From contig NW_026781986.1 of the NCBI RefSeq assembly GCF_031769215.1, positions 310,001 through 374,000 of the forward strand: 64,000 bases of DNA, given 5' to 3'. The notes beneath the pieces were generated by a model. The model saw only the letters and a program-made list of their open reading frames with translations. It ran no database searches and was not told where the DNA came from. Shown here piece by piece: positions 1 to 36,074 of the stretch. Within the stretch, counting starts at the first letter, position 1. Each line of letters begins with the position of its first letter. A program made the translations under genes and the position numbers. This DNA is from Ylistrum balloti. Taxonomy: Eukaryota.

Positions 1-403
1 AAGTATGACCGAAAGGTTGAAGTAAAGTTGAAGTGAGGTAAATTTAAGTTATGAATAAGGCAAAGCTTGTCTTCGTCAATGATACCTTCAATATATCTAT
101 TTTCTGGATGTTTTCCATTGACAAAAATCGATTCTCTAAGATCACATATTTTTATGTGGCTCAATGTTCGTGATTTTGTGTTTAAATGCTAGTTTGTGGA
201 CTATTTGTTTCGTGGATAATATAGCTCAATATATTTACCTACACTTATTTAACAATTCGTGGGCAAATGTATTCATGGATCAAGAGTACATACCTCATTA
301 ATGAAAATTTATCTTCCACCAAAATGAATGATTTTACGGTAAATAAACACCTTCTCGATCATAATACATTTTAGTACAGTAACTGTAGTTTATCTCATTT
401 CAG

Positions 404-533
404 GAGCCACAGATTTCGTGGGTTTGAACTTTTACACGTCTAATCTGGCAGAATATTACCTGGACGAGACATATGCACGTGATTATTATTCTGATATGGA
501 TGTCCACTTGTCGAAAGATCCTTCCTGGCTTGG
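404..533 (+). CDS. GH1 domain A exon ([12 protein letters not shown]...DPSWLG)
   Basis: CAG acceptor at 401-403, GT donor at 534; 130 nt, same size and phase as 9405-9534 and 16413-16542. Confidence 0.93.
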
Positions 534-6500: not shown

Positions 6501-9500
6501 ATTCTCAAGATCACGTGGGTCAAATGCGTTTAAATTTTCAAACGACTTTTCAATAAACAAACGTTTCAGGGTACCGATATTGTGCTTGTAGAATGCGGTG
6601 GTGAAGGCTTGTCAAGTTAGTGTAAATAAATAACCTTGACATTTTTTAACAAGCGATACAAAAAAATATCAAACAAAAAAAATATTTCTCAATAACCAAA
6701 AGGTTTAGGGTACTGCTGTTGGGTATGTTAAATGCTGGAATGAAGTAGATCAGTCATTCTTTTAAATAACCAATAAGCCCTGGTTATGCGTAAAAAGCAT
6801 GCTGTGAATATATTTATCAAGTTTGCAATAAATTGACTTTACAAACTATTTTTTTTCTAAGCTTCAGATCATGTGAGCGATTCAGGCTTATTGCTAGTCT
6901 ACTTTGGCGATAACCGTTTATTATCGAAGAGAGCAAATTAATGTAGTTATAGTGCGCAATAAGTGTCTGGTTGCTCTTGCGTGACCAAAAGAAATCACTC
7001 GTGTTAAAAACAATGAAATAGCCCTACTTTGACGCTAAAAATCAATTATATTTCATGTGTTTTAAATACCAATAACTGAAAACATCAATGCTTAATTATT
7101 GATTTCACGATCAATTGACAATTAACAATTTACTCGTCTCTGATATCCTACTTTACTACTTCCTTTTAGCGTTTAAAAAATGCAGTATCCAATGAACATC
7201 ACATTTACACGTATCCATATCTTATTAATAACTACATGAATTTAATATTTTTAAAATCTTAATTTATGACAAAAATGGTGAGTCAATATGATTTAAACAA
7301 ATATTTACATTTTAAAATTTTAATATATGGAACGGATACTTCCCTGTTCCTGTCTAGTCCCGCTAATACCAAATCACCTGGATTGTTTACAATATTTTAG
7401 GTATTTCATATATTTTTAAGTTGATGACAAAGATATGATTTTTGTTAAATACAGGTGACACATTATCGTTTCTCCCTGTCATGGCCCCGAATATTACCTG
7501 ACGGAACAACAAATATTATAAACCAAGCGGGGCTGGATTACTATGACAAGCTTATTAACGCCCTAGTAGAAGCTGGAATAACACCGATGGTAACACTCTA
7601 CCACTGGGACCTGCCCCAGGCTCTACAGAACAGAGGTGGAGGCTGGTTAAATGCCTCCATAGCTGACGTTTTTGCCGACTACGCCAAATTTGTTTTCGAG
7701 AAGTTTGGAAACAGAGTAATTACAAAATAAATTACAACTTTGTATAAATTTTTTGAAAGAAAGAGATTTATATATTTATATATATAGAATTTGTTTGTCT
7801 GTTTTCAATAACCCTTAGACCCTTAGTATAATTGAAGAGTTATAGGACAAATCAGCGCTATGATGCAGTTTAATTTAATAGTTTGGCTCTTTTGTATCTT
7901 GAAATGTGATATTCACTTGAGAGTCTTGTGTACTATTTTCTTACGATCCCAGAACTAAAACAGGTTCCTTACTTCAAAATAATACTAAATTTTGTTAAGG
8001 ATGACATTTGTTGAGGCCATATTTTGTACGAACTAAAAAAATCTAAATGAAAGTAAACGTCCATACTTGTATTTCATACCTGAGAAAAACAACAATAAAT
8101 ATTGACATATAATGTTTATTTCTATTCGCATAACAATTAGGTGAAAACATGGATCACACTTAATGAGCCATGGGTGGTGGCTATGAAGGGATATGGGGAC
8201 GGAAGCATGGCACCTGGGATTGCAAGCCCCGGGAACAGCGTTTACATAGCTGCCCATAACCTCATTCGGGCTCATGGAAAGGCATATCGTGTCTATCAAA
8301 AGGAGTTCAGCCAAGTTCAAAATGGTACAGAAATGAAAACTTTTCTTAAATTGTGATTTTCGATTTTAAAATTTTGAAATGTCAAACTTTTCCTATGCGA
8401 CTGTTTTCTGATAAATTACAGGTTGACAAGGCTACTGCTTCGTAAATTTAATAATATGTCACATATTTCATATTTCTTATTTTTAAGGAAGCGTGGGTAT
8501 TACATGTAACTGTCACTGGACTGTCCCCAAGTCGGAGGGTAGTCGTTTGGACAAAGCGGCCGCCGAGCGCGCGCTCCAATTCCAACTAGGCTGGTTCGGG
8601 CATCCTATTCTCGTCAATGGCGATTACCCGGATGTCATGAAAAGGCAGATTGCTAACAAAAGTGAAGCACAGAATCTTCCAAATAGCAGACTCCCACAAT
8701 TTACATCAGAAGAGAAGCAATATTTAAACGGTAGGAAACGTCAAAAAATCATCAAAAAAAATAATAATAATTGTCGCGTGAATTTAACACATAGTCCTTG
8801 TGAACTTAATTTGATAAATCATGAAACAATTTCGTTATTCAAATTCAATGTTCTGCAGTGTCTGAAGTGTAGCATCACATATAATACAGGATTGAAACTA
8901 TAAAAAAATTAAAAATCTACAAACGCTTTCTGTCACTCGGAACATGTCAGCTGCTAAAAAAGTTTATATTTTATCCCGCTGGTAAATTGGTCGTATTAAA
9001 ACTGGTTTTATAATGGCAAATATAACATTTTAAACGAAAAATTGAAAAGATTTAGCATTAGATATGAAATACGCTGTTCAAGTTTGCTATATTTGTGACT
9101 GAGTGGAAAGACGCAGTCATGAATCCAATTTAAATCACTATTGAATGTGTTATGCCATATCATTGTTCTTTGAAGACGTAATGACACAATTATACAGATA
9201 TTGTTTGTATGTTGTGACATAATCAGATAGATGAAAAGGAAATTCAGAATAAGATATAATTTGTTTTACCCCACTGAACCAGTAATTAAACTTTCTGTTC
9301 GTTCTTGGGGACAAAGAATGAATATTGTTAATATGGCTGTTTACAATATTCACAACACATTTTATGAAAGATAAATTATTCACGTGTTGTTGATCAACTT
9401 TCAGGCTCTGCTGATTTCATTGGACTTAATTTCTACACTTCTGACGTCATACAGCATTATGAAGACCCAGACTTACCATTGGATTATTACTCAGACATAG

Positions 9501-12500
9501 ATGTCAAAATCTCCAAAGACCCTTCTTGGCTCGGGTATCGTTTTTACTTATGTTTTATAGTCATAATATCAATAAGGTTGTTGAAATTTCGCATTCGTCA
9601 TAATTAAACACAACGGCATAAACGAAAGGAAGCATTGATAAAGCGAAAGGGTTCGATTGGAAAGCCAGCAATAACATTTTAACAAAATGAAAACAATCTG
9701 AGCAGCCTAGTGTATCAGTGACTCAATATATAATTTTGTCTCACCTTTGAATGAAGGAAGAAAGACATATTGGTTTAGTAATGTCTTTTTTCTTTGGCTT
9801 ATTCTTCTTCTTCTAGTACTTTTTTGTCAGGTAATAATTTTAAACCGTAAAAGATATCGTAATAGAAGTTCTTTACTTCTATTACCGAAAACCTGATGTG
9901 CAGTGCATTGCCGTTAGGTTACTATGACCTTGATCTCAATGTCAGATACTAGATAATTTATTCTAGTCATGTCCTAACAATGAACCCTGTCGAACTCCAG
10001 CAGAAGTGTTATTGTCTTTTCTTACAGTACTTAACAGTACAAGAAACATTTATTAGTTGCGATCTTTCAAAATATACATTTGTATTGTTTCACATTAGCC
10101 AATACTCTCTTAATTTGAAAATAAAATACATGAATATTCATTAAGACAGGCTAAATTAACACACTCGATAATATGTGAATGGGATATACATTTGATATTT
10201 TGATATTATCAGCCAGTTCTGATAATGAATCGTATTGTAATTATGTGTGAAATAATTGCTGTATCTAGTAGGTTTACTTGTTTTAGCTACCAACACTTAC
10301 CAATATTTTCAACAATAAGATAATGTCGAAAAAAAATGATTGAGAACAGTTTTTTTCTAGCAAACACATTATACTACAAAACAGCAAATATATTCGCTAC
10401 AAAGGAGATATCTATGTTCGAGACGTTTCATCAATACAGGCCTTAAGTTTCCATGGTGTAAAACACGGCAGTAGACGTGGAGTAGGAGACGCTTACAGTT
10501 CTGGAACATCTGGTCATGTACTGTTTACTTTGTAATAATTTTGTTTTCGCCATATCCTAGTTTTATTCTTAATAACGTTTTACACGTGGCAAACAGGAAA
10601 CGGTTGGTCTAAGTGTTTAGAAATCCGTCAGTGAAGTGTACCATCACACTAACTTTATCATTTTGTTTCGCGAAGACAAGCTGTTGTTAAAATCGATCAG
10701 TTTTTATGAACAGGATTAAAGGGCCTGAGGGTCTAACTATGGGGGAAAACTAGGGCACATGTGAAAAACCCACGTGCTCGGACGTACAGCCCGATTGAAG
10801 TTTTTTTTCTTTTCACGGCCGATTAGCGAATCAAACTTTAGTTACCGAAGTGAACGAGTGCGTTACCCTGGCGACCATTCGACAACCTGAACAAGATTGT
10901 GTCCGGAATGCATGGCTTTAATGTTTTTCTTTCTTTTCAGATCTGGATCTGATTGGTTGAAAGTGACCCCTACTGGGATACGCCGTATGCTGACATGGAT
11001 GAAGGACCATTATAAGGATGCCCCTATCTACATTACAGAAAACGGGGTGTCCGACAGGAATGGCTCGCTGCTAGACGAACATAGAATAAACTATTACAAA
11101 CATTACATCAACGAAGTCCTAAAAGGTAGCAATTCATCTTTGTAAATAGTCGTTTTATACCGAGTCAAAGTATATTTTTTTTCATATCGGGTTTCTCAAA
11201 GAGGTCACGTACTGGTGATAAGAACCGAATTTAATATAATACATTTATGCCGTTTTGAATAAAATATTTTATCGTTGTTTCCATTGCACAGCAAGAACCA
11301 GCAACAGCAAAATGAATATCGAAAAAGAAAAATGCCGTAAGATCAAATTGACTTATATTTTTACCATAGATGTGTACATCTTAAAGTATTAAAAACATTG
11401 AGATTCCAATGTTTGCACCGCTAGGAGGTACTCCTGTTGATATATGCTATTTCGTTCTTTCATATTGTCCCGAAATAAATGATATTTCAGCAATTCACCT
11501 GGATAACGTGAATGTACTAGGCTACACTGCCTGGTCGTTGATGGATAATTTTGAATGGTCGCGAGGATACGCGGAGAGATTTGGTCTCCATTACGTGGAC
11601 TTTTCCGACCCAAAACGACCTAGGACACCTAAAGCCTCGGCCCAGTACTATCGGCAGCTCATTGAAAACAATGGATTCCAGGAGCTTCAATCGAAACCTG
11701 CACCTCAGACAGAAGGAAGTGAATTCTTCTATGGAACTTTCCCGGAAAATTTTGCATGGAGTGCTGCGACTGCAGCGTACCAGGTAGAAGGTGGCTGGAA
11801 GGAAGACGGTACGTATCAGTATTGTCAACATCTGAATAGCCCATCAACACAGAAAGTGTTAAAAGGACCAATACAAGATACCATGTTGAAAAGGAAACAG
11901 CAAGAAACAAATTGTGATGTAAAAAATGATCTCTAAACATCAACTGAAAACTAACGTTAAAAAATATAATCACACACATAATTAAAACGAAAAGTTTCTG
12001 CACCTTTTCCTGTCGTATGGAAAATGGCTAACTGCTCTCGTATATTTAGAATCATGTGTACATCAACGTTTTCAAATAGAGGGTTTATATTTGTAGTGCA
12101 TTACCAAAATACCAAGCGCATACATACATTCTAATAGAACAAGGTTTTAAAATAAACTGCAGATGGTATGTTATGTTCCAAGGCCGGGTCATCGTGCTTT
12201 GATATAAAGGAATATACAATGTATGTATTTATTTGCACCTTTATGACATTGAAACCACTGGCAGACTTTTGGTATTAGAGAATGTATTCTTTGTTAACAT
12301 AGTTGTTGGACTCGATCCTATATATGTAGTCTGTCTAAAATCATTGATTACAAGCCGATTTAATGACTCAAGCTGTTTGGTTATGTGATGATTTGGTCAT
12401 CGGAGATGTTCTGTGGTAGAACAAATATGGAATCGGAGCTTAAATACATACATTACATCTATCGATGTGTTCGAGCGTAATCACGAGGTCCCCCTTACGA

Positions 12501-15500
12501 GAATTTACGTGTCTTACGACAGATGGTATCAAATAGCTGCATTTTAACAATCATAGCTGAGGCTACCATGCGACCATATTTATAACTTCTGTATAGAATG
12601 ACTTAAAGTCATTATATTTAAAGTGCAGCTTCGTAAAGGAAGAAGTAAAACATGGATAATCAGTGATATAATTACTGGGTTTATGAACGGTATTGATTTG
12701 ATCGTATATTTATATTAGTTTGCCTGTTGAATCCGTATTGCAGACATTATTCTCATTTAAGAAAGTGACATTACCTAGTTGAATTTGCCAAGATTCTACA
12801 TGGCGGGTGTCGTCCATAAAGGAGATACCGCTTACTCTTCTAGAACACCTGGTCTTATTCTCCTTGATTTATTTATCAGATTTTTTTTTCGTTCATATTT
12901 TCCCTTACTTTTTATTGAATTTTATTTTGGCTTATGAATATATTAACATGTTGTTATTTTCTTGTCTTTTTTGTTACATTTTTGTTTTGTTTTTTTTTTA
13001 ATAAAGACAAATGTTGTTTTATTGTCACATTGTATTAAAGTGCATAAACTAGGAAATAATTCTTAATGATCAATCTTAAATCGATTTATTCCCCTTCGAT
13101 TTTTGTTAAAAATTTGGACAAGATTTGAAAACAATCATTATTTGTATGGAATCAAATAGAAATCGTCGTGTTAGTATATCTGTATTAACATTATTTAAGT
13201 TTCCTTCTACGGACCCCACTATGAATTACCTACAATTTGAAGGTTTAAAGCGTTATGACGAAAGACAAGTAACGAATATCGAAATACTGGATTATCCGAT
13301 GGTTTGACCGATCGTTGCATCCTTACTCCAACGACTTACTAAATTCTTAAATTGTATCTTAACCTACCACAGGAAAAGGGCCGAGCATTTGGGACACGTT
13401 CTCTCATCATGATCACGTGGACAATAATGATACTGGCGATGTTGCTTGTGACAGCTACCATAAATACCTTGAAGATGTCCAGCTTCTCAAAGATATGAAA
13501 GTAAAGTCTCGGACTAATATCGAGTTTTTGTTAATGTTGCAAATTTGTTTTCCATGCAAATTTTTCTTCTCAATACTGGTATTTCCTATTGAATACAAAT
13601 TGTTAGATACATTGAAACGAAGCGCTCCCGCTTTTTGTTGTCATTTCAACATTTGCCATTGAATAACATCTTAAAATCATTCAATTAAGACTATTCCACA
13701 CAGTTTCATACACTTTTTAATGAACAAAAAAATATCAGCATACTTCACGGTTTTTAATTAAAAGTCTCAGAGGATCATTTCAATAAATAGTGAACTTATG
13801 GGTAGTGTTCGAATTATTATTAAAATAAATCCTACAGGTAACACACTATCGCTTCTCCCTGTCATGGCCCCGGATATTGCCAGATGGCACTACTCGTCAC
13901 GTGAACCAAGCAGGTATAAATTACTATGACCAGCTGATTGACGCCTTAATTGACGCTGGAATCACACCAATGGTCACGCTCTACCACTGGGACCTACCTC
14001 AGGCTCTACAGAACCAAGGTGGAGGCTGGCTGAACGCTTCAATAGCCGATGTTTTCGCCGATTACGCCAGACTAGCTTTCCAGAAGTTTGGAGACAGGGT
14101 AAATTCTCAGATAATCAAAAGTTCTTTTTATGGCCCAATATGGCGGTCGAGGCATATATTGTTATCAATGTCAATCATTTGTCATGATTTCAATTTCGTT
14201 TCCGGTAATTGAATTATTAATTGTTTTATTTACGTTTAACGATGATAGATTTAAGAACGTTGATTTCTATGCTACATAAATGACCAATATTGTGGAGCCT
14301 TGCCTAACTCCCGTTGAATGTAAAAAATAAGACAAAAATCTGTAGACGGAACTTCAATTGCATTTTGAAAAACCATGATGACACAAATAACACATACAAC
14401 ATCTCCCTGATTGTTGTCGGAGGCATTCGTGTCGGACACCTCTAGTCTTTTCATAGCATTGAAGAAAACAGAAATGAGAAATATGATAAAATACTAAAAT
14501 GGCAAATGTTTTATTGTAGAATTGTAGGGTGATAATCTTTTTGCAAAAATGCTTTGATATTGGTTGGGAAGATGGAGCGATATATTTACTATTAATCACT
14601 ACGGCGCTTGGATTCAATTACCGTTGATCCCTGTACTTCGATGCACAGTCAAGTCATTTATAAAGTTGTTCGTAGAACGGCGGAAATAAAACAGAACTAG
14701 ATTGTTTATCAAGGAACTGTTTACTATAAATATATGTAAATGGTAAAAGAAGCTACAATGAGCTTTAGATGCACTATTTTCATATTCTGACAGCTTCCAA
14801 TTATTATGAAACTAAAACATTAAAATAGTTTTTCACTTCCTGGTCCTTGCTTCATTAAAAAAAAACTTTACAAGCCAGTTATCGGAGATGAAGCGGAAGA
14901 CGCTCAAACGTCCTGAAGATCTGGCCTTATTATTATTACTATGGATGTTTTGTAAGTTATTGAGACGTCCGGTAAATATATTGTTGGTCTTGGAAAAAAT
15001 TATTTTTTTTTACATTGTGATGGAAAAACCAAGTAAACATGCACGAAATTTATACTCGTGAACATGCCCAACCCAGTACAACTGCGAAATGTTAGCCCCG
15101 CGAAATGTTTGCCCCGCGAAATTTGACAACTTATATAAAGTCTGATGTTTATTCACAAGTTGTAATGATCTCTATATTGTCAATGAACTTGAAAATGAGT
15201 CTCATTCGCCGCACCAATATAGAACAGATCTCTTCAGCTAAAGCAATAATTGAAAGAGAGCTTTGGAATATTTTAGGTAAAGACGTGGATCACCCTAAAC
15301 GAGCCATGGGTGGTTTCTGTCCAAGGGTATGGACAGGGTATCAAAGCCCCGGGACTTGTCAGCCCCGGAGACGGGGTATACGTCGCCGCTCACAATCTCA
15401 TTAGGGCCCATGGGAAAGCCTACAGGGTGTATGAAAAAGAGTTTAAGCAGATCCAGCATGGTAAGCAATCCAATTTCTTATAAACATTCCTGAAAATACC

Positions 15501-19100: not shown

Positions 19101-22100
19101 CACGAATGTAAATTGATTGTTTTATTCTACAGTTTGGATATAATTTTCCAATTTAGCCTGCCGGTACTCAAGATCGTCAGTAACATATATATATACAGTT
19201 CTTATTTACTCGAATGTAGATATTTCCATTTTCACAGAGAAGACTGGTAAAGAAACCAACGAAAAGCACATTTAAATACAAATGTAGACTTAGACACAGT
19301 GAGCCAAACAATAAATCGAAATCCTTCATCTGTTCCATTCTTATTCAAGAAGTCGTTAATGATGCTAACACCTAAAATGTTGAAACCACAGAGGCGACTT
19401 TAGATCATCCAATTTGTGCGAAAAAGAAATTTCAGAAATTAAATTCAAAATTCAATTAATTTCATAGAACACAAAGTACATATGTTTATTTTGAGCTGTG
19501 CCACTATTTGACTGGATAGAAATGCAGCACGCTGCGACAGTACACCTGGGGGCTGGAAGTCTGCCAGCAGTGTCTTCCACCCGCACACACAAGTGAATAA
19601 CATTTTTAATACAAATTTAAAACCAGATACAAAAGAGCCAAACAATGAATTAAAAACTGTACAAAAGACACACAAATAGAGAGCATCTTTTGTTACAAAT
19701 TTGATTTAAACTGCGTTATACAACAGTTTCGTCCTTTTTGGGGCTCGTCAGTGATTTAAACAAAGGGCAAATCACAAGTAAACTGAAAGCAGTATTTATC
19801 AATAAGGAAGAATGTTAGTGAAAGGAATACCAATAAATGTATCTCCCTCGGCCTGTTGTCATTTCAGGTAAGGGCGCAAGTATATGGGATGTTTTCACAC
19901 ATAACCGTAAATCTCCTAATTATGACACTGGAGATGTCTCTTGTGACAGCTACCATTACTGGCGGGATGACATTACTATACTGAAGAAACTCAAGGTAAA
20001 ATCAAAAATACACGTAACAATTGAATGAACTGTATAATGTATAAGTGACTTAAATCAAACATCATTCTTTTTAACACATTTTCACCATCGAGATATTTCC
20101 AATTCAAAATGAAGTGAATACTTGTTACTTTTGAAGTAAAATGCAGAAAATAACAACTTGTTTCCTGAATAACTTATTGCAGGTATCAAGTTATCGGTTT
20201 TCTATCTCCTGGTCTCGAGTTTTACCTACTGGATCAGCCAACAACGTTAGTAAAGCTGGTATGGAGTATTACGACCAGTTGATCGACGCCCTGGTGGAGG
20301 CTGGGATCGCTCCCGTAGTAACACTTTATCACTGGGATCTACCACAGTTCCTGAATCAAACTGGAGGATGGCTTAATGACGATATCATCACACTGTTTAC
20401 TCACTTCGCTGACCTTTGTTTCTCACGGTTTGGTAATCGAGTAAGTATCATTCATAACCCGTTTCGAATCAGATTTAAAAAATGTGTAACACAAATAAAA
20501 TGAAAACAATTACTGTAATAGTTATTGCGTTATTCAGGATTGTGCTTATTTTCGGTTTCATTCATCATTATTTACTCATTTTTCATACCTTTTAATTTGA
20601 CATCTTTGTCTATGAACATTTCTTTATTCTCATCTCTGGATTTCAGACAACTTTTTATTCTTATTTCACATTAACATAGAAAATATTTGCTATTTGACTC
20701 TATTTGATTTCTATTTCTGACATTTGATCCTCATAGGTAAAGACTTGGATTACAATATCAGACCCCTATTCCATAGCTGTAAAAGGATATGGACAAGGAA
20801 CCTTGGCCCCTGGAGAGATGAATCAGGACGTGTACAAAGTTGGGTACAACCTCCTACTAGCTCACGCTGCAGTTTACCATTTGTACAGCCAGAAATACCT
20901 ACCTTATCACAAAGGTGTGTAGGTCAACTGATTATAAAAGCAGAGCAACATGGCGTATCATTCTCAGAGCGATGTCACTCTAAGTTGGGAAAACTGTAAA
21001 AATGTCATCTTGAAAATGTTTTGCGGTTGTGAACTTAAACAGCAAGGTATTTCATCTGTTTACAGGTAAAGTGGGGATAGCACTCACTGCACCATGGGCT
21101 GAACCATTGAACAAATCACACGAAGAAGATGTGCTGGCATCAGAACGCGCGCTTCAATTCATGCTCGGATGGTTTGCCAACCCAATATTCAAGGACGGAG
21201 ATTACCCCGATGTGATGCGAGCATCCGTACTTAAGAATAGTTTGATGGAAAATAACCTCGACAGTAGATTAATTAAATTTACGGCACAGGATAAAATAAT
21301 GTTACAAGGTAAGGTTTAATCTATTTATAATCTATACCCACAGTTCTTTTCCTTTGTATGTGTCATCAAACAACTCCTCTCTCTTACTTCACCACCAAAC
21401 TATACATTGGTGGGAAAGAATGTGGTTGCTGTATGTTAGAGAATTCGGGGACTATTAAGTGGACATCGGGGGGGGGGGGGGGGGGGGAATAAATAGATAT
21501 GCTACCGTCTTTGAAACTAAATTCTTACCATTTCTTTCTTTTCTGTCCACTCAACATTTTCCAAGGCAGGTTTGACATTCATTCTATCACGCAACTGATG
21601 AGAACGTTGAATCCCATGAAACTTTACTACCATCATGTTACCTTATCAGACGACGTTTCTGGTGCAAGATAGGAGCAACAACGTGTCAAAAATATAAAAT
21701 CCGTAGATGGATTTAATCTTAACATAACCATATAACAAACTCTAAAATTTTAGTTCTCAAATTCGGATTTTTGTAATACGCCATCTGCTGTTCATAACTA
21801 ATTATTATCTTGTCCACAATAAAGTCAATATGAACAGTTTTGCAAAAAATTGTGTGACGACTTAATTTTCCAAATGTGATTTACCATTTTTGGATACAAC
21901 ATTCCTGCGTCCCAAACATTACATATCGCAGATGATTCTAGGACCTGTTTCAAATATCACAAATTTCGCGCAAGAAATTGACAACTTACAGAATTTGTTG
22001 AGAAGTATTCTATTTCTGTGTGCGATAGTATGGTGCATGTTAAGACAAGTTGATGTTTTGATAAATCAAATATCTTGACCTGAACTTGGTGACTCACAAG

Positions 22101-25451: not shown

Positions 25452-28400
25452 TTATAAACATTTATCTTTTACAGAACAAGCTTTGAACTTAGTTTAGATG
25501 TTAAACCCTAGGAAGCCTCCTTTGAGAGACCACAATATAAAACAGTGATCATACTGTCAGATCGTCATCATACATGTTCAACAACATAGATGTACAACAA
25601 CTGTTTGTTAAAATCTAATAATTTCGTGTGTGAATGTTTTGTTTTCTTCCTGTAACGTCATAAGTCCATCTGATTCAGATATGTTTATCTTATTGTTGGT
25701 TAATATCGTGTACTAAGGCCAGTTTCTTTGATCGTTAATCTTTGTGACGAACAATCGTTAATGCATATATACCGCAAGAATTTTATACACAAATATTCAG
25801 ATTTTAGACGAAATACGCAATGTTCAAGTTTTTATGATATCGGAGCTTTGTGCCAACACGAATGTTCATTAACAAACAGCTTTATATCATAAAAGCGTTT
25901 TAGTTCTTGTGAGTTCATTTTATTGAGGATTTTGAAACAGCCGAAAGGAAGTTTCATGTCATGATATGGGAATGTTACTGGCTAAAGTGTTGGAAACGGA
26001 TCCAGACACTGAGAAGTATTTTGATAAATCGTAATATTATTGTAAACGAGCCAGTTCTGAAACAAGGATGATAATCTCGCGTGACTTTCGAAACATTTCA
26101 CAATACATTCAACTCTCTGTTACGGTCTGGAATTCGTCAACAAACTCTACCTTTAAGAAAGTGGTTGAATTGAGGAGGTTCCGTTACTTATAATGTAACA
26201 TTTAATTTGAATGTTATTCTAAGAATATTAGCATTGTCACGTGTTGCAGGAGATGTTTATTAATTAAAGAATACAAATCCAACTACATTTTTTATTATTT
26301 ATTCATTCTGATGACAAACTTTAAATAGTTATGGCAATCCTTACTTATCAACGTCTCCATGGTAACTTAGTCGACAGGGTAAAAAATGAATCATTAGAAA
26401 GAAGCCCATCTCTTCTCGAGCTGATAGTGATATCAAGGTCGCAATGGAAGGGACACAACTCTTGCAGACCTGATTTTCCAAAGAACTGCGAGATCCTGTT
26501 CACAGGAACATGTAACACACAAAACGAAATCTAACATTACATTATCCATTAGAATGAACGTGAGCGCGATGATTCCCCCAACGGAAATTTCACTCTGAAT
26601 TTTATTATCATTATTTCTTCATCAGGTTTCCGACACTTTTCTCTAAAATCATAAATTGGACATTCACTTTGAGAAATTAATACTGATGGCCTCTAGAAGA
26701 ACTACTTCCTTTTTTCTGATTTACAAGGCTGGCCGCCGTTTGTGCCCCTGACTGACTAATACAAGGTTCACTCGAGGTCACTGGAGTTCTGATTGTCTAC
26801 CTTTGAGACAAACAATATGTCCGAACAAGATGTCCACTCCATTATTTCTTTACTGTATCTGTATGATTCCACATTGTCATATAGTTTTATGAGGAAAGGT
26901 GTCCTCCTTTAGATATAGTCAATATATATATATTATCTTGTATGGCGGATTAAGTCTTCAGTCATGTCTACAAAACTAATAGTGCGACCATTCATCAATA
27001 TGTCCGAGAACGAACCTGTTGTAAGAAAAACATTTTTTATCTCCACCATTAAAATGACCCCTGACCTCAATCCTCACTCCGTCATAAATCGGTATCCGCT
27101 CTTTTAGTCTGTAGTGTATTAAGATTTTGAATCGATGTAGTTGTTTTGGTAAATACTGCGGTTTAAGTTTGGCTTAAAACTGGTCAACTTATTTTTTTCA
27201 TTTCTTCCAGAGTTATCTTTCTTTAACTTACGATTCTACCAATTTTCTCAGTGTTGAATCTGTATATCGAACGGTTGATTGACGTTTATTACAAGAAGAG
27301 ACAAATCAAGTTAATACTGGGACATTAGCATATGTGTTTGCATTGGTGCATCACAAATTCATACCACCAATAATTCAAGTACATGAAGCATACCTGTTGA
27401 AGCTAGCTCTATGCTATGAATGAATACGTAATATGTCTTATAGAGGAATTCTGAGTATTTCATCGCCCTAGTATTATAATTAAGTCAGTTGAAATGTCAT
27501 TTCAGGCCAAAAACTCGAGAGTTGGTTTGTTTAGAAGCATTACACAATTGTACCTCAGTATAACACAAACAAGATGCACTCATGAATATTGGAAGATATT
27601 GTTATTCTCGGAAGTGCGAAGATGATATCCATCTTTTGTTGATTTTCATTCTTAATGACAGCCTTTGAATAACGAATTAATTATACATACTTTGACATAC
27701 ACATTGATTCGGAGATCAAAAAGGGATATAAAACTCCACTTCATGCCTTTTTAGTTTAATTTGCTTAAAACTATCCTTTTGTATTGATATTGTAAGACTG
27801 AAATAGTTTGCCATTTATCCATGTCTTAGTTATATGTACCAACTACATCGTTACAATGTTAATAAAAATAGAAACACATTGAGTTTATACCTTGCCGAAC
27901 CATTTTAACATATTTCGATCTAGAACCGTCTGATGATATTCATCGTTGTCCTCGCCTTTGTCGACATCTTCTTGTCCCCCAAATTCATGCCTTGTTGTCG
28001 ATGATGAAACAAACGAAACATAGATGAGAGGAACCGGAAATGGGACAGTATGGTGCATGCTGGGTACTTACTTAAGCGGGAAAAAAACTACGAAACATTA
28101 ATCCTTCCACTCGGCAACGTGGACGACCCTCCGCGGCTTGATTTAAAAAAAAAAAAAAGCAAAAGCAAGCCAACACAAATTTATACACATATTTTGATTT
28201 AAAATAGTTTTAGGTATAATTACACTTGATTGGAAATGATTTATTTTTCGTTCAAATGGAAAGTCCGCGACTCGATTGTAAGATTTTACTACCAAGTTCA
28301 ATACTTACCTCGCGACATTCTTCTCTTTTTGTCTTTGTGTGAAATCCGTTTTATTTAAAGATAGAAGAAAGGCGAGAAATGGACAGACAACAATAACGCC

Positions 28401-29546
28401 ATATGTACATTTCTCTCATGAATTGCAAGTTTAATAGTGTTTTACAAAGAAATGTATATTTAGTGATAACCCACCAGTAAAAACGAATGTGGAAGCGGAA
28501 TAGGAGCAAAACTCCTGCAGATTTCCATAAACAAAACCATGAAAAGTCAAATTTTCTTTTCACTTCTTGAAAAACTATACCAGAAATGCAATTACATGCC
28601 ATAAACAAATAAAAAGAAATAACATGCTTACTTACTTCGACTGGGTTTGTTTGTTTGTTTTATTTTTTGTTTTGTTTTTTTTTTTTTGTTTTTTTTTTTG
28701 TTTACTCTTGACAGACATTCTTCACTATTTCAAAGTCAACGATTTGGTCTTCCGTTTTGTACAAGACACAACAGTTACAGTGAAACCAACACTGTTAAAA
28801 TATTGGTAGGAAAACATGCTGTAGATTGTAATCGATTGGATAAATACTATATCAATATATCGACCTGCTATAACTGTGTCTATTGAAAGGTAAACACAAG
28901 ACTTTAATCACTAGTATTCGTCAAGGCTGCAATCTAAGACCTTTCTTTTGTACAATATAATTTATAAACAACATTGTGTCGTGTATTTAGCGATAATTCA
29001 TTAAATTTGTTGTTGTAGTTGTTGTTTTGATTTTGAGGGCGTTACAGACCAGAAGAGGGCCAATGTTACAAAAACAGTAATATGTCTCTTGTTCCTCTAG
29101 ATGAACGTGCAGGAAAAACAAGATATTATCAACGTGTCTAAACAAACCTTAATGCAAACGATGTGCAGAAGTCATATATAATATAGTCAGAAAATTAACT
29201 TCGAGTAAATTTGAAATTCAAATCGATGTTTATCTAGTTTTTCTTTTTAGGGAGGGGGTGTTATTTATTTTTTTTATTTTTCTTAACAACTCTTTTTTTA
29301 ATTAATTAGATCAATAAACATGTAAACATTTTGATATTTTTGTGTTTAGTTTCTGAAAACAAAATGAATATTTCCCATGGTGCATCAGCGTCATATAACA
29401 TTATTGTGCACCAGGAAAAGTAAGCTTGGGTGTACAGTTTAGATAAAGGCTGTCCCACTCAATCGTGTTGTAGGTGTATATAATTCATAGAATTTATCTA
29501 CATTGTTAAGTCTTTCAAATTGTGTGTAGAATAATTATTAATGAAG

Positions 29547-29960
29547 TAAGAGGCCAAGCGGCGTTAACGGTCTCTTATGGTAACGTGTATCCAACCTGAC
29601 AATTGAAACTGACTCCAGTTTGACCTATCGAGAAAATGTACCCCCTTCCTAGAGGGAACGCTAGACTCAGGGGGTCATAAAATTAATTTACAATTTACAA
29701 TTCTGGTAAAGCACATTTAGACCCATCCCACCATTTATTTTATTTATCATATTTTGGAGTTGAGAAGATGTAAAAATATTTTTTTCTGTATAAACTTAAG
29801 TAAAGTTTGCACCCTCCCCAGGGAAAATGTGAGACCCTGGGGTCATGAAATTTACACTTTTGGAAAAGCACTATAGTACTACTGCATTAAGAAAATTCTT
29901 CCAGCATACATATGAAACAGTAAACCCGGCCCAGTATGGGTTACCTCCCTTCAATCACTA
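29547..29960. mobile_element. Degenerate HINE/satellite-like element with ~168-bp internal repeat
   Basis: ggggtcat(a/g)aaatt recurs at 29671 and 29839; begins aagaggccaag..ttaacggtc, like bivalve HINE ends as I recall them. Confidence 0.45.
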
Positions 29961-30286
29961 GTGACTGCATTGAGAAAGCCTTCTTCGTAAACCCGTCCTT
30001 TGATATCACCTACCAACACCATTTTAGACATATCAAATGACCTATTCGGAATATACATATGTATTTTAAGTTCGTGTAAATAAATAAAGATAGATAAAAA
30101 TAACGAAATCTTATGAGTTATTGTATTTGTGTGTCTCCGTATGTCAATTTTGAGATTCCTCTCGATCTTTCTGGATTTTTCCAAAGTCGCCTTTTACACT
30201 TCAAAATTTAAGTCATTGGCTCATATTTTTAATGCTTTTAAGATTTAATGGACCTAACAAATTATATTTTGGCAGTAAATTAGGGA

Positions 30287-30890
30287 TTCTTATAACACAA
30301 CCAGTAGAAGATTAGAGTGTGACATATCGATGACTACTCAGTCACCTTCATCATATAACACAACCGGTAGAAGATTAGAGTGTGACATTTCGATGACTAC
30401 TCAGTCACCTTCATCATATAACACAACCGGTAGAAGATTAGAGTGTGACATTTCGATGACTACTCAGTCACCTTCATCATATAACACAACCAGTAGAAGA
30501 TTAGAGTGTGACATTTCGATGACTACTCAGTCACCTTCATCTTATAACACAACCAGTAGAAGATTAGAGTGTAACATTTCGATGATTACTCAGTCACCTT
30601 CATCATATAACACAACCAGTAGAAGAGTGTGACAGAGTGTGACATTAACACAACCAGTAGAAGATTAGAGTGTACATTTCGATGACTACTCAGTCACCTT
30701 CATCATATAACACAACCAGTAGAAGATTAGAGTGTGACATTTCGATGACTACTCAGTCACCTTCATCTTATAACACAACCAGTAGAAGTTTAGAGTGTGA
30801 CATTTCGATGACTACTCAGTCACCTTCATCTTATAACACAACCAGTAGAAGATTAGAGTGTGACATTTCGATGACTACTCAGTCACCTTC
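30287..30890 (-). repeat. 63-bp tandem array (about 9.5 units); left arm of a foldback; each unit is a degenerate hammerhead motif on the minus strand
   Basis: Unit ATGACTACTCAGTCACCTTCATCATATAACACAACCAGTAGAAGATTAGAGTGTGACATTTCG; its reverse complement contains TGATGA-A-GGTGAC-TGAGTA-GTCATC-GAAA-TGTC-ACAC. Confidence 0.93.
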
Positions 30891-30907
30891 GACAGACAAA
30901 TCATGCA

Positions 30908-31400
30908 TTACATTTGTCTGATGAAGGTGACCATGTAGTATTACATTTGTCTGATGAAGGTGACCGTGTAGTATTACATTTGTCTGATGAAGGTGACCAT
31001 GTAGTATTACATTTGTCTGATGAAGGTGACTATGTAGTATTACATTTGTCTGATGAAGGTGACCGTGTAGTATTACATTTGTCTGATGAAGGTGACTATG
31101 TAGTATTACATTTGCCTGATGAAGGTGACCCTGTAGTATTACATTTGCCTGATGAAGGTGACTATGTAGTATTACATTTGCCTGATGAAGGTGACCATGT
31201 AGTATTACATTTGTCTGATGAAGGTGACTATGTAGTATTACATTTGCCTGATGAAGGTGACCGTGTAGTATTACATTTGCCTGATGAAGGTGACCCTGTA
31301 GTATTACATTGGCCTGATGAAGTTGACTATGTAGTATTACATTTGCCTGATGAAGGTGACCGTGTAGTATTACATTGGCCTGATGAAGGTGACCATGTAG
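30908..31400 (+). repeat. 33-bp tandem array (about 15 units); right arm of the foldback
   Basis: Unit attacatttg(t/c)ctgatgaaggtgac(ca/ta/cg)tgtagt. Confidence 0.95.
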
Positions 31401-31417
31401 TCATCGAAACGTCACAC
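31377..31417 (+). ncRNA. Minimal (Penelope-type) hammerhead ribozyme motif
   Basis: CTGATGA (31380-86)-A-GGTGAC-CATGTA-GTCATC-GAAA-CGT-C-ACAC: 6-bp stem II, palindromic ACGT in place of stem III, GUC cleavage triplet; stem I is imperfect in this copy. Confidence 0.65.
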
Positions 31418-34400
31418 TCTTCTACTGGTTGTGTTATAAGAACATCTTTTATTCTATTGGCATTACAACCTGAAGAAAATATTCAGAAATATGTTGTTGA
31501 TAGCTCATGTTCTATACCCTTACCTACTCGAAAATGGACAACTTAGGTTTTCCCATCGACATGGGGAAATTATTCACCAAATATAATATAACTATGTTTA
31601 TACTGTAACTAGAAACGGTTTGTGTCCTTAATGTACCTACATATATAACTGAAAGTTCGACTTTCTCCGAATTGAGATATAGGAGAATTATATCTGTTAG
31701 GAGGATTTATAGACATGTATAAAGTAGTGATGTACGACATAAACCGAATGGATTTTCACTGAAGTCAATAATAAAATTTTGTAGAGGGCTGCATTCATTT
31801 CTAACTGTCGTGTGTAAACTTTAGTCAATTCCCTATAGGATCAAATTGTGGAACAGCAACAATGTTATATTTTAAGCAGATTCTAAAAGCAACAACATGA
31901 TAAGTCGACTTTATAGTGGAGATGGGGAATTTTAATACAGGTGGCGTTGAACAAATGACAACGTAACGAAACGTAAACAAAATATCATGTATGTTGTATT
32001 CTGCGTTTTTGAAAAGTTTTGGGAAGTTATTCACTGGAAATAAAAAAAAATAATAAAACAAAAACAAACAAAATACAAAACCATATATAAGACACAAAAA
32101 ACCCACGCAAACACGTAATTTCATGTCATAATTACATTATGATTTCTTTATTTCATTAGATAAGTTCATTTTTCATGATCTATAAGTCTGATTCGCTTCG
32201 TCAATTTTATGAAAAATAATGCCCTGCATGTTAAATTCTACAGACGTCTGTGAGATGATGATATTGTAGGCCAAATTCTTTTTTAATTCTATGGCGACTG
32301 CTGTCCTATTGCAACATTGTCGCTCTTACATTTTCCTCTATCATCCCTTGTTTTGTCTGTTGGTGTTTCTCTAGACACACTTTCTCATTGGACATTTTCA
32401 AAGACGTAAAACCCTTAACAGATCATGAAAGAATTATGTCAAGTATGTCAAAAACCTATTAGTCAGACTTCCAACTGAACCGAACGAATCGTGGTGTCCC
32501 TTACCCAACCAAAACCTAGGCACATATAGATGAGAATCACAGTCAAAAATAATGTGTGTGTATTTCGCAATGTTTAGATTTTTTGTAATACTTCCGGTGT
32601 GGTTGTTGACGTATGCTCTGATGTCCATTCAAACTGATTCTACCTGTCAAATCACTGCACATAGAAGACGATATGAAAACATGTCTTGTTGAGTGTCGCA
32701 AACTAACACAAGATTCTTATCAGTGTCTGAATTTGTGCATGGGACTGCCTAATCAAGTTATTCTGCAAGAATAGAAATCATTTGACAATGATGTATGGGT
32801 GACTTAAAATAACCTACTGGAATGATATGTCCAATTCATTAAATGATGACAGGTTGTCCAAAAAAGAAACAGTACAGATGGACTTTTTAAGGATACAATA
32901 CATCCTGATGACACAGCCAGGGTTTGGCGCTTTGTTTTACTTTTACAAGAAGATCCTGAAGACTGTTCAGTTTTAAAAATATTCTGACGTATCGCCCCAG
33001 GCAGTGTCATCATGGTCGATTATATTTGCCAAGAGAAGACAGGATAGAAAGAACATTATAAAAATCTCAAATGTTATAACGGAGGCGGCATTTGAACATT
33101 GAAATCTCATTATCCCTTTAGGCAATTAAGATCCCCTCCCCTCCAAACAGACACCGTCTCTATATCTCTTAGACATACATACATCCCACACCCCTGATTA
33201 TACCGGTGTCTTCACTGAGGAATAACAGCAAACACTACCTTGTAATAGGGAAGTATGAGACACTAAATGTGCACCTGAGCGGATATCCTCCACAAGATCG
33301 GATAGTAATTGTCTTTCTGCTTTCTTCTTGTGCAAAAAAATCACCACGTGACTTATATGATATGCGGGAATCTCCTCCAAGGGTTTGAGATTGTTGTGCT
33401 CTAGCCTCCAGTAGGGGATGGTCCTTTTTCTACCCCTTATCACCATTAAACGTTAAATAGATTATCGAGAAAAATATATCCTGACAAATTTAGAAAAAAA
33501 TCAGTTAAATAACGACTTTTATTTTAACCGATTTATAATCTACATTATATACTGCACAAAGATAATCGTAATGATAAATCCTTGTCATAGTGCAATAAAA
33601 CTTGATTTGTATAAACAAAAATGATCAGATACTGTCTTATAATAACATCAAACATCTTAAACTGTCGACATCTATTAGTCAATTCTCTCACGTCTCAAAT
33701 TAACAACTTCCGGTTTAGCACGTGTTTGTGATCACGGCGTGTAGACTGTCTTACCCTAGCAAGACAGGGATATATTACCCTCGCGGGAAGTGTGGATGTT
33801 TCTGTCCGATGGGGTAGAAAAATAACCCCGTGCTCTTTTGAGGTACGTTTCTGACTCGTGTAAAGTAGCTCCTTTGCTCCTACAATAGACAATCGCCTAC
33901 CCTGAAATTTTTTTGCCCAATTAGATCTTCGTCTCCCAGGTTTCAGTATGGAATTTCGAGGAAGAAAATGCTGCTGTAGCTAAAATAGCTGTAAATCTCC
34001 ATAAAAGATTTTGGGTTAGGAACATTGTTCAGAATGTTGTTCACTGTGGTATTTCGCTGTTAAATTTCATGGATTGGGCAAAAGCATAGAACACCTCTAG
34101 TTTCTGGCCAAACGGGAAAAGGGTTAAACTGGAAAGAAATGTACAACAATTTCTGCATTTTTATACGCGTTAGATTCATTACTAGATATAGCTGACCCAT
34201 TCTGGCTAATCCAGTTTGTGAAAGGTTTTAAAATCCCTTCGCCTGACAGGAAATATGGCGTCACACAGTTCACAATACATATCACTACAACCAATATCAA
34301 TCCCCTAAATCCACAGGAATCCAATGTTCGTTGTTAATCCTGACACGTCTGGCCAAGCTCCGATGAATATCGATGTTTTAACCTTGTTTCACTGATCGCC

Positions 34401-36074
34401 AAGGAATCTCTTATCAGCCTAACAAATACTGAGACTGTTAACTGTATAGCACATGACTATTAAAACTAACGGTCATTCCATGTCCAGATTCAAGGCGAGT
34501 ATTTCAAATCCTCCCGAGTACTTTATGTGAGCAGTTTTATATCAGTCATCTTGAACGACTAATCACGTGATTGTCTTAATTAGCAAATTTTCAAGAAATC
34601 TCGTAAAAAGGTTTTAGGAAGGAATTACAAAATATATTTTACTACATTGCCAAGGAATGTCTGGTTCATGTAGTGTTGTCCTTGACCGTCCTTTCACTTC
34701 CGGTCATTTACAGTGTACTGTGGCACGTAACAAAAGATATGGTTCTTGGGAAATTTCAATATACTCTCAGTTTATTGTCATTCTCAGATACTTATTAAGG
34801 TCAACCATTATTAGACAGGGTCTAAGAAGCTATGGGTACACCTATAAAAAAGTCATTAACACCTAAAAGCTCTAAACGTGTGCGGGACTTATATTAGTGG
34901 TAGGTGGGAGGGGGTTGCTGGTTGGAGTTGGGGTTGCTGATAAAAGTCGCTCATAATAGACTTAGCATTATGCAATTTTTTTAGATGTGCTAGCAGTACA
35001 GGACCGGAATCAAGTAGCTAGAAACAAAATTGTAGCCAACAGTCAACTCCCAAACACTTCTACTGGTTCCGGACTACACCGACTATCACACCTTTGCGAC
35101 TTTTATACCCCTTGACCCCAAGGAACCTAACCGGATTGAAACCGAAGGTAGCTATAAGACTCAGCGACTGGCTCCACCGTTGAAGCTTCTATCAAATCAC
35201 AGCGCGTAATACAATTACCCATGGCCCATCTCACAAGATGGCCGAATAACAACCCGACACTTGTCATATCAGACACGACGTCCTTCTGTAAACCATAGGA
35301 TGAACCGCCATAGAACTACTGTAATTGCGACTAAGGGTATGTATGCCTTATAAGAGCCAAAACCACTACAGTTTCACTTATCACCAAACACTAACATTTA
35401 TTGCCAAGTCGCAGACGACAGAAATTCCGTTTATATCACACATCATAATATTTCTTTCATTCACTTCATATTTTATCTAGGTTTGGCGGACTGTCTGAAA
35501 AAATGGTCCAATATCTTTATACTTAAAGACATGTAAATATATTGCACGTGTGTGTCTGAATTTATTTAAGTCCCAGTAGTATTTCCACTATCACAACCTT
35601 TCAGCAGACTGAGAATCGATTGGTTGCTCCTTAACGTACGTAGCTAAGCGAGCTTAGGTCTTGGTTAAATAACATACTTATTTCAATTAAACCAATAAAC
35701 TGTAACGAGCCCATCACTCACTAAACCTCAAGAACAGATAACTCTTGTAACATCATCAAATTAAAGGGAGGTAACTTTTACTAGATGTTTCCGTTCCACC
35801 AACTTTTGGTGGATCTTACGGGAAAGATTCCATAAATTTGATACCAAATTGAATTTCCTTACTAATACCGAATGAAAAATTGGACAGACACATATTTGCG
35901 GAGTAGCTAAGACCATTAATATGGGTCAGACACAGCACAAACGTATAACGAAACCCATTCTCCAGGTAATATTTCTTTGGCAATCATCAGACATGCTATT
36001 ACATCGCTTAGCTTTTTCGCTTTTGATTTTTTAAAGCTGTCTTATAGACGTTCAGTAATTAACTACCACCTCTA

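What the first reader, a model, noticed from the sequence alone, without database searches (positions are those of the whole stretch)
30287..31442. Foldback built from a Penelope-type hammerhead ribozyme, with each arm expanded into a different satellite
Seen: the block is one large inverted repeat. The ends are exact complements (ttcttataacacaaccagtagaag at 30287; cttctactggttgtgttataagaa ending at 31442) and the centre is a hairpin (cagacaaat 30893-901, 10-nt loop, atttgtctg 30912-920). The ancestral arm reads tttgt-CTGATGA-A-GGTGAC-loop-GTCATC-GAAA-CGTC-ACA: hammerhead core, 6-bp stem II, 3-bp stem I (TGT/ACA), palindromic ACGT for stem III and a GUC site. The left arm amplified a 63-bp unit holding nearly the whole motif on the minus strand (C3->A, ACGT->ATGT). 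The right arm amplified a 33-bp unit holding only the CUGAUGA half and ends in one intact core at 31380-31413. Knowledge: minimal dimer-acting hammerheads occur in Penelope-like element pseudo-LTRs, which often insert as inverted pairs; hammerhead satellites are known in newts, schistosomes and cave crickets. Inference: a snapshot of a ribozyme-derived satellite being born from an inverted retroelement end; a transcript could form long dsRNA, self-cleave or circularise.
Basis: partly seen in the sequence, partly recalled or inferred. Interest (0 to 1): 0.8.

Follow-up and report, generated by a model that had tools for sequence, protein, structure and literature searches.

The report
Inverted Penelope retroelement tails turned satellites
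The block is a head-to-head pair of severely truncated 3' ends of a Penelope-like retrotransposon, each end carrying that family's minimal hammerhead motif and each since expanded into short tandem repeats; this is a tidy but ordinary fossil of a known kind of element, and its ribozyme copies are almost all broken.

Summary
Window 30287-31442 is a foldback with an exact 25-nt terminal inverted repeat and a 9-bp/10-nt central hairpin. The left arm holds a 63-bp array on the minus strand. The right arm holds a 33-bp array and ends in one full hammerhead core at 31380-31413.

The Penelope reading also holds.
- In longer copies it lies 135-215 nt downstream of an RT + GIY-YIG reading frame.
- It shows the published hallmarks of Penelope "min-HHRs": a bulged base after A9, a G10.1-C11.1 pair, a 6-bp helix II and a palindromic ACGU with no loop 3.
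The left arm shows no clear one.

Corrections:
- The 63-bp repeat was not born here. Its junction occurs about 3,350 times genome-wide. Only the 33-bp repeat is private to this locus.
- No Rfam hammerhead model detects the motif.
- Every left-arm unit has a mutated core, the right-arm units are half motifs, and the one full core has lost helix I. Self-cleavage here is unlikely and untested.

Verdict: a new member of a known kind, of modest interest.

The parts
30287..30895 (-). Left arm: the 3'-terminal segment of a Penelope-like element in minus orientation, as 9 tandem units (eight of 63 bp and one irregular 100-bp unit at 30607-30706). All units have a damaged hammerhead core. The outer end at 30287 has no clear tail.
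   Evidence: The unit junction (..GTTATAWGA|TGAAGG..) is the genome-wide type. The exact variant with loop UGAGUA plus AUGU occurs only in this locus.
30607..30643 (-). Partial unit inside the left arm, with a 10-bp duplication and a 4-nt (AATC) deletion. The right arm's terminal unit has the same deletion.
   Evidence: period 10, 30624-30644, I9 (31 nt, 97% complementary to 31411-31441); the deletion variant occurs only 3 times in the genome, 2 of them here.
30893..30920 (.). Centre of the foldback: 9-bp arms and a 10-nt loop, where the two 5'-truncated copies meet just upstream of the hammerhead motif.
   Evidence: An independent 87-nt contig spans it exactly (table 8, X2 record 15).
30911..31372 (+). 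Right-arm array: 14 units of 33 bp. Each holds helix I 5' strand, CUGAUGA, the bulged A, the helix II 5' strand and the loop, but no helix II 3' strand, GAAA or cleavage site.
   Evidence: The junction is private to this locus (14 of 14 genome matches). Word depth in bins with private variants is about 2-5 times that of the unique flanks (table 2).
31373..31442 (+). Right-arm terminal unit with the only full min-HHR core (31380-31413). The predicted cleavage site lies after C 31413. Helix I is lost (GGC in place of UGU).
31443..31486 (+). Penelope 'tail' extension, clearly present only on this side of the insertion.
   Evidence: Alignment to family copies L086, L061 and L071 and to the younger family L073 and L060. 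Loose-end consensus of other copies (table 7). The tail is defined in PMC8557442 and PMC11167929.

Best explanation
The block is a head-to-head inverted pair of extremely 5'-truncated copies of a Penelope-like retrotransposon (PLE). Each arm keeps only about the last 75 nt of the element, with its 3' end pointing outwards.

That terminal segment contains the family's minimal type-I hammerhead motif (min-HHR). The motif has no loop 3 and a palindromic ACGU, so it is expected to act only as a dimer and probably with protein help.

The pair was most likely made at insertion. The PLE enzyme is reported to cut and extend both target strands and to start reverse transcription at two internal sites, which would explain why only one side has a clear tail.

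The left arm came in carrying the family's common 63-bp terminal repeat and was then homogenised in place. The right arm later amplified a private 33-bp piece of the motif, by slippage or unequal exchange.

Shown: the anatomy, the family link to an RT + GIY-YIG frame, the motif hallmarks and the copy numbers.

Inferred: the insertion mechanism, how the arrays grew, and that the locus is now ribozyme-dead.
For: 1. Family. The terminal 93 nt hit at least 588 candidate places in the genome.

2. Intact motif. UGU-CUGAUGA-A-GG..-CGAAACGUC-ACA occurs 114 times exactly, against 0 for the reversed control.

3. PLE link.
- In L021 a decayed GIY-YIG coding remnant ends about 215 nt upstream of the motif.
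- In the younger sister family, L044 has a 587-aa open frame with RVT_1 (1.8e-07) and GIY-YIG (0.0023, below Pfam's cut-off). The motif follows about 135 nt after the stop.
- Atlas neighbours of that frame carry HTH_animal, RVT_1, GIY-YIG and DUF8422.
- Of 9 young-family loci fetched through the protein alone, 8 carry the motif. In 6 of them it starts within a few bases of the same offset.

4. Motif conservation. Between the two families the core and the 6-bp helix II are kept. Loop II changes from 6 nt to a 17-18-nt extension and G.U becomes G-C. Within the young family the variable core position is N7, the one free position of hammerheads.

5. Published hallmarks met: a base between 9 and 10.1, G10.1-C11.1, palindromic 15.2-16.2, a long helix II and a short helix I (PMC4209133).

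6. PLE-type insertion anatomy.
- Inverted 5'-truncated copies and a 30-40-bp tail at one end are described in PMC8557442.
- Cleavage and extension of both strands, and two internal RT start sites that define the tail, are described in PMC11167929.
- Here the tail is clear on the right only.
- The young-family pair at C85 has the same minus-then-plus order, with the tail on one side.
- Of 27 old-family copies, 9 have an inverted partner end within 1.4 kb, and the inner junctions differ among the five compared.

7. Arrays. The 63-bp junction occurs 3,353 times genome-wide. The 33-bp junction occurs only here. The left-arm variant is private. The arms share a rare deletion.
Against: - No Rfam hammerhead model reports the window copy or intact family copies, even at E<=10 on about 100 nt.
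- Thermodynamic folding predicts helix II, but z-scores are unremarkable (+0.43 to -1.32) and the MFE pairs part of the core instead.
- Helix I of the family is only 3 bp, against the 4-5 bp given for most min-HHRs.
- No target-site duplication could be read.
- The two arms are truncated at nearly the same point. Two independent truncations would not predict this; a snap-back copy or a later palindromic rearrangement would.
- No RNA data exist for this organism in the runs offered, so neither transcription nor cleavage is shown.
Confidence: 0.8

Rival explanations
1. It is a Foldback-type or MITE-type DNA transposon whose terminal inverted repeats are built of tandem repeats (like Drosophila FB or Tetris), and the hammerhead likeness is incidental.
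For: It has an exact 25-nt terminal inverted repeat, arms made of tandem repeats and a short centre. Several family copies are short foldbacks of 275-295 nt between inverted ends. The two arms are cut at nearly the same inner position.
Against: The arm sequence is the 3' non-coding end that follows an RT + GIY-YIG frame in longer copies. Inner junctions of the foldbacks differ from copy to copy. The ends are asymmetric, with a clear tail on one side only. Most copies are single ends with 5' truncation, not paired ends: 18 of 27 have no inverted partner end within 1.4 kb. No target-site duplication was seen.
Confidence: 0.06
2. The element is a Penelope tail, but the 'hammerhead' is not a ribozyme. 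The conserved block would be kept as a protein-binding or reverse-transcription start signal, and it matches the hammerhead boxes without catalysing cleavage.
For: Rfam models do not detect it and folding statistics are weak. Helix I is 3 bp. Published min-HHRs cleave poorly in vitro (PMC4209133). In the anole PLE, ribozyme mutants did not affect insertion, and no RNA ends mapped to the cleavage site (PMC11167929). The 63-bp units multiplied to thousands of copies with a dead core.
Against: All four hallmarks that were not part of the published search descriptor are present. The only variable core position in the young family is N7. Helix II is kept across families despite a replaced loop. The anole PLE motif does cleave when the protein is added, and C3/G8 compensatory mutants behave as expected for a hammerhead.
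Confidence: 0.15
3. The arrays are a working retrozyme-like satellite: tandem units are transcribed, cut by their hammerheads into monomers and circularised, and the circles are copied back into DNA.
For: The tandem units derive from a PLE terminal region, as proposed for animal non-LTR retrozymes (PMC7229834; bioRxiv 10.64898/2026.07.22.740005). Arrays of this unit sit at roughly 900 loci, extrapolated from 27 loci in the first 100 of 3,353 matches.
Against: The units read AAGAUGA or AUGAUGA instead of CUGAUGA, so C3, which pairs with G8, is lost in every array unit, here and genome-wide. The unit is 63 nt, against 150-450 nt for known retrozymes. The new junction lies inside the CUGAUGA box, not at the GUC site. 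The 33-bp units lack half of the motif. No RNA run holds the locus.
Confidence: 0.04

Closest known systems
Minimal hammerhead ribozymes (min-HHRs) of Penelope-like elements (Cervera & De la Pena 2014, PMC4209133)
   Same: CUGAUGA and GAAA boxes and a GUC site; an unpaired base between A9 and G10.1; a G10.1-C11.1 pair; a 6-bp helix II; a short open helix I; no loop 3, with a palindromic ACGU that implies dimeric action; a position in the terminal non-coding region next to an RT + GIY-YIG frame; occurrence as single motifs and as close pairs on opposite strands.
   Different: Helix I of the family is 3 bp, against the 4-5 bp usual in the paper (2 bp in D. virilis). In the window itself no copy is intact. 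Activity is untested.
Canonical PLE insertion structure: pseudo-LTRs, an inverted 5'-truncated partner and a one-sided 30-40-bp tail (PMC8557442; PMC11167929)
   Same: 3' ends point outwards, 5' truncation is extreme, and a ~44-nt tail is clear on one side only. A sister family in the same genome shows the same minus-then-plus pairs.
   Different: Both arms are truncated at almost the same base, so the whole insertion is non-coding. Both arms have since become tandem arrays.
Animal non-LTR retrozymes, i.e. hammerhead satellites (newt satellite 2, Schistosoma Sm-alpha, mussel and coral retrozymes; PMC7229834; bioRxiv 10.64898/2026.07.22.740005)
   Same: Tandem repeats that descend from the hammerhead-bearing terminal region of PLEs.
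   Different: Units are 63 bp and 33 bp rather than 150-450 bp. They derive from a min-HHR rather than a canonical type-I motif. The core is mutated or halved in every repeated unit. No circular RNA evidence exists.
Foldback transposons that seed satellites (Drosophila FB; Tetris, PMC4079207)
   Same: Inverted arms are built of tandem repeats, and a dispersed element supplies the units of a satellite.
   Different: Those are DNA transposons with repeat-built terminal inverted repeats. Here the arms are retroelement 3' ends and the inverted order stems from PLE integration.

Membership tests
PLE min-HHR (PMC4209133) | Catalytic boxes CUGANGA ... GAAA ... UH | tested here: met
   Window 31380-31413. 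There are 114 exact family copies. The boxes are absent from all 9 left-arm units and incomplete in the 14 right-arm units.
PLE min-HHR (PMC4209133) | [quoted passage not shown] | tested here: met
   A at 31387; G 31388 pairs with C 31405. The same holds in both families.
PLE min-HHR (PMC4209133) | Palindromic 15.2-16.2 with no or a palindromic loop 3 (dimeric helix III) | tested here: met
   ACGU at 31409-31412 and in family copies. Eight of the nine left-arm units have AUGU, self-complementary only through G.U; the outermost unit reads GAUAUGU.
PLE min-HHR (PMC4209133) | Long helix II (6-8 bp) and short helix I (4-5 bp; 2 bp in D. virilis) | tested here: inconclusive
   Helix II is 6 bp with one G.U, which is G-C in the sister family. 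Helix I is 3 bp (UGU/ACA) in the family and 0 bp in the window's only full copy.
PLE min-HHR (PMC4209133) | Lies in the terminal repeat or non-coding end of an element encoding RT + GIY-YIG | tested here: met
   L044 has a 587-aa frame with RVT_1 and GIY-YIG, and the motif about 135 nt after the stop. L021 has a GIY-YIG remnant upstream. 8 of 9 loci fetched by the protein carry the motif.
PLE min-HHR (PMC4209133) | Self-cleavage after H17 | not testable with these tools
   This needs in vitro transcription. No RNA runs were offered.
Rfam Hammerhead_1 (RF00163) and other Rfam hammerhead models | Covariance-model score at or above the gathering score (34 bits for RF00163) | tested here: not met
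   No hammerhead hit was reported even at E<=10 on the window copy or on intact family copies. The same RF00163 model finds at least 27 other sites in this genome above its cut-off.
Penelope-like element insertion | 5' truncation, an inverted 5'-truncated partner, and a 30-40-bp tail at one end only | tested here: met
   The arms keep about 75 nt of the 3' end. They are in minus-then-plus order. The tail 31443-31486 is clear on the right only; the left flank matches it at 12 of the first 20 positions by my own hand count on the alignment, which I leave open.
Penelope-like element insertion | Own RT + GIY-YIG reading frame | tested here: not met
   There is no such frame in 26000-36000. The only ORFs there are read-throughs of the repeats. 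The locus is a non-coding remnant.
Animal non-LTR retrozyme | Tandem units of 150-450 bp, each with a cleavage-competent type-I hammerhead, expressed as circular RNA | tested here: not met
   Units are 63 and 33 bp. C3 (and in some units U4) is mutated, or half the motif is missing. RNA could not be tested.
Foldback / MITE DNA transposon | Paired termini with a target-site duplication and a constant internal structure among copies | tested here: not met
   No target-site duplication is readable. Inner junctions differ among the foldback copies compared. 18 of 27 sampled copies have no inverted partner end within 1.4 kb.

The most novel reading that the evidence does not exclude
The 63-bp unit may be defined by the Penelope enzyme itself rather than being an arbitrary slippage product.

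Its 3' edge (..GUUAUAAGA) falls within a base of where tail-less copies end, which would be the inner reverse-transcription start site. Its 5' edge lies inside the CUGAUGA box.

A second junction type (66 bp..AAGAACU|AUAAGG..) has edges at nearly the same two points.

Arrays always sit between the intact motif and the tail.

If each unit carries a start site, array-bearing RNAs would re-initiate or switch template at every unit. The element would then generate and spread its own satellite by retrotransposition, to about 900 loci, extrapolated. The hammerhead core would not be needed for this.
Probability: 0.3. Interest if true: 0.55.

Novelty: new member of a known kind. Interest (0 to 1): 0.3.

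Why it matters
The locus shows, base by base, how the hammerhead-bearing tail of a Penelope-like element can turn into tandem repeats.

- One repeat (63 bp) is already dispersed in thousands of units.
- The other (33 bp) is confined to a single locus.
- This bears on the current proposal that animal hammerhead satellites (non-LTR retrozymes) descend from PLE terminal regions.
- Here the repeat spread even though its ribozyme core is dead. That argues that multiplication of this repeat did not depend on self-cleavage.

For annotation, the case is a reminder that such foldbacks are retroelement remnants, not MITEs, and that Rfam models miss min-HHRs.

Tried and rejected
- Rfam scans. I scanned the block, the single full core and two intact family copies. 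No hammerhead family was reported at E<=10. The weak MIR2617 and snoRNA rows are repeat artefacts far below their cut-offs.
- Folding. Single-sequence and dimer folding predict helix II but give no significant z-score, and the MFE dimer is not the double hammerhead. This does not decide the question.
- My first reading. I first took the block for a MITE with terminal inverted repeats of about 130 bp. I dropped this once longer copies showed a GIY-YIG remnant and a sister family showed an RT + GIY-YIG frame upstream, and once the foldback centres proved variable.
- Read laying. Only contigs of DNA runs were offered. Repeats from other loci dominate the joints, so no empty-site allele or target-site duplication could be read, and array length cannot be judged. 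No RNA run holds the locus, so expression, cleavage ends and circular RNAs are untested.
- Covariation statistics. I did not attempt them across decayed copies. Copies decay neutrally after insertion, and most loci were fetched through the motif itself, so the test would be biased.
- Further loci.
- Earlier notes.
Full report
**What is there**

- The outer 25 nt are exact complements (I16).
- The centre is a 9-bp hairpin with a 10-nt loop at 30893-30920.
- TRF finds a 63-bp period on the left, at 30291-30626 and 30646-30890 with 97% matches, and a 33-bp period x15 on the right, at 30907-31401 with 93% matches.

I split the arms into units.
- The left arm, read on the minus strand, has 9 units.
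  - The innermost starts UUUGU-CUGUCGA.
  - Four start AUGAUGA and three start AAGAUGA. One more AUGAUGA unit (30607-30706) is irregular and 100 bp long.
  - Eight read GAAAUGUC and the outermost reads GAUAUGUC, in place of GAAACGUC.
- The right arm has 14 units. Each holds only the 5' half: helix I strand, CUGAUGA, the bulged A, GGUGAC and the loop.
- The right arm ends in one full unit, 31373-31442.
  - Its core is complete at 31380-31413.
  - It is preceded by GGC, so helix I cannot form.

**It is a dispersed family, and the composite is real**

The window is part of a 648-Mb, 1,372-contig animal genome.
- The terminal 93 nt find at least 588 candidate places.
- The exact pattern UGU-CUGAUGA-A-GG...CGAAACGUC-ACA occurs 114 times, against 0 for the reversed control.
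- Most copies have a 6-nt loop II, commonly CGUGUA, UGUGUA or CAUGUA.
- A second, more uniform family has a 17-18-nt extension of helix II in its place, and reads GUCACC instead of GUCAUC, turning a G.U pair into G-C.

**The family is a Penelope-like element**

- In L021 the motif is preceded by a decayed GIY-YIG coding remnant (YI..TGRKFG..R..EH ... KEAIWIRR). That upstream region has more than 1,300 candidate relatives.
- A protein search with one such remnant found better-kept copies.
- L044 has a 587-aa open frame with RVT_1 (1.8e-07) and GIY-YIG (0.0023, below Pfam's cut-off). The motif starts about 135 nt after its stop.
- Atlas neighbours of that frame are RT/GIY-YIG/HTH_animal proteins of invertebrates.
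- Of 9 young-family loci fetched through the protein alone, 8 carry the motif. In 6 of them it starts within a few bases of the same offset. Their only variable core position is N7 (U, G or A), the one unconstrained position of hammerheads.

**The motif matches the published class**

Cervera and De la Pena (PMC4209133) defined min-HHRs of PLEs. They listed features that emerged beyond their search descriptor:
- a nucleotide between 9 and 10.1;
- a conserved G10.1-C11.1 pair;
- palindromic 15.2-16.2;
- a long helix II and a short helix I;
- occurrence as single motifs or as pairs 100-700 bp apart on opposite strands.

All of these are met here, except that helix I is 3 bp.

A descriptor of my own found the window's core and gave no hit in 300 simulated windows.

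There is evidence on the other side.
- No Rfam hammerhead model reports the motif, even at E<=10 on about 100 nt. The same RF00163 model finds other, canonical hammerheads in this genome.
- Single-sequence folding is unremarkable.
- The class is known to cleave poorly in vitro. In the one PLE studied biochemically it needs the protein and is dispensable for insertion (PMC11167929).

**The foldback is a PLE-type insertion**

PLE copies are typically 5'-truncated. They often have an inverted 5'-truncated partner and a 30-40-bp tail at one end only (PMC8557442).

The anole enzyme cuts and extends both target strands. It starts reverse transcription at two internal sites, and the tail is the stretch between them.

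This locus fits that picture.
- The right arm runs on for about 44 nt (31443-31486), which aligns with the tail of other copies and of the sister family.
- The left flank diverges at once. It matches the tail at 12 of the first 20 positions by my own hand count on the alignment, which I leave open.
- Loose ends of other copies laid on the locus confirm that the family normally continues into this tail (table 7).
- The young family shows the same minus-then-plus pairs, at C85 and C201, with the tail on one side.
- Of 27 old-family copies taken in contig order:
  - 19 keep upstream 3'-UTR homology;
  - 10 keep a tail;
  - 10 carry extra repeat units;
  - 9 have an inverted partner end within 1.4 kb.
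- The inner junctions of five such foldbacks differ. This argues against a MITE amplified as a unit.

**The two satellites have different histories**

- The 63-bp junction (..GGUUGUGUUAUAWGA|UGAAGGUGAC..) occurs 3,353 times within one mismatch.
  - I extrapolate roughly 900 loci from the first 100 matches.
  - Some of these loci are foldbacks with arrays in both arms, at C23 and C47.
  - So this repeat was not born here.
- The exact left-arm variant (loop UGAGUA plus AUGU) occurs only in this locus. The left array was therefore homogenised or expanded in place.
- The 33-bp junction occurs 14 times, all here.
  - Its private-variant bins have only about 2-5 times the word depth of the unique flanks in four DNA runs.
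  - This repeat is locus-private and present in all four runs laid, including the one labelled as a second organism.
- The arms share a 4-nt deletion found only 3 times in the genome. They are sister copies or have exchanged sequence.

**What remains open**

- The near-symmetric truncation of the two arms is not predicted by two independent truncations. A snap-back copy or a later rearrangement would predict it.
- No target-site duplication could be read.
- Transcription and cleavage are untested, because no RNA run was offered.
- The 3' edge of the 63-bp unit coincides with the end of tail-less copies, and a second junction type (66 bp) has similar edges. This suggests that the enzyme itself shapes the arrays, which is inference only.

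**Verdict**

The thing is a known kind: PLE min-HHR tails in inverted order, decayed and turned into short tandem repeats. The locus is most likely ribozyme-dead.

Noticed in passing
G000 C874:485752-486065, C348:515462-516041, C36:1273684-1274456; locus L054 1420-1780: Rfam Hammerhead_1 finds at least 27 sites above its gathering score in this genome, many in head-to-tail arrays with 45-bp spacing. Each 45-bp unit is a complete canonical type-I hammerhead and nothing else: CUGACGA, GUCC/GGAC helix II, GAAAC, a palindromic AGCU loop 3, and helix I closed by a 3-nt loop. A satellite whose unit is only the ribozyme seems unusually small beside known retrozymes of 150-450 nt.
   Followed up: partly
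window 19720-19757 (-): A solitary, weak copy of that canonical hammerhead (CUGACGAGCCCCAAAAAGGACGAAAC...). It scores 24.1 bits with RF00163, below the 34-bit cut-off, with E 0.49 for the whole genome.
   Followed up: partly
L009 and L011 (G000 C390:2336923-2337284, C335:223096-223259); L065: Other junction types of the same terminal repeat exist. One is a 66-bp unit joined ..GUUAUAAGAACU|AUAAGGUGAC.., and another is joined ..GUUAUUAGUAAAGGUGAC... Their edges fall at nearly the same two points as in the 63-bp unit.
   Followed up: partly
L021 6781-7592 and 3019-3528; L026 and L027: Unrelated minisatellites that read as long repetitive ORFs on both strands lie next to some PLE remnants. They are probably repeat-rich neighbourhoods and were not examined.
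   Followed up: no
window 29774-29947: A second high-copy repeat lies about 350 bp left of the foldback. Its contig word depth is 400-14,700, against 11-28 for the neighbouring unique sequence (table 2). Its family was not identified.
   Followed up: no
window 29948-30208: In the run labelled as a second organism (X5), the left unique flank has almost no contig depth, while the right flank and the 33-bp array are covered. This could be divergence, a deletion or a different left junction in that sample.
   Followed up: no
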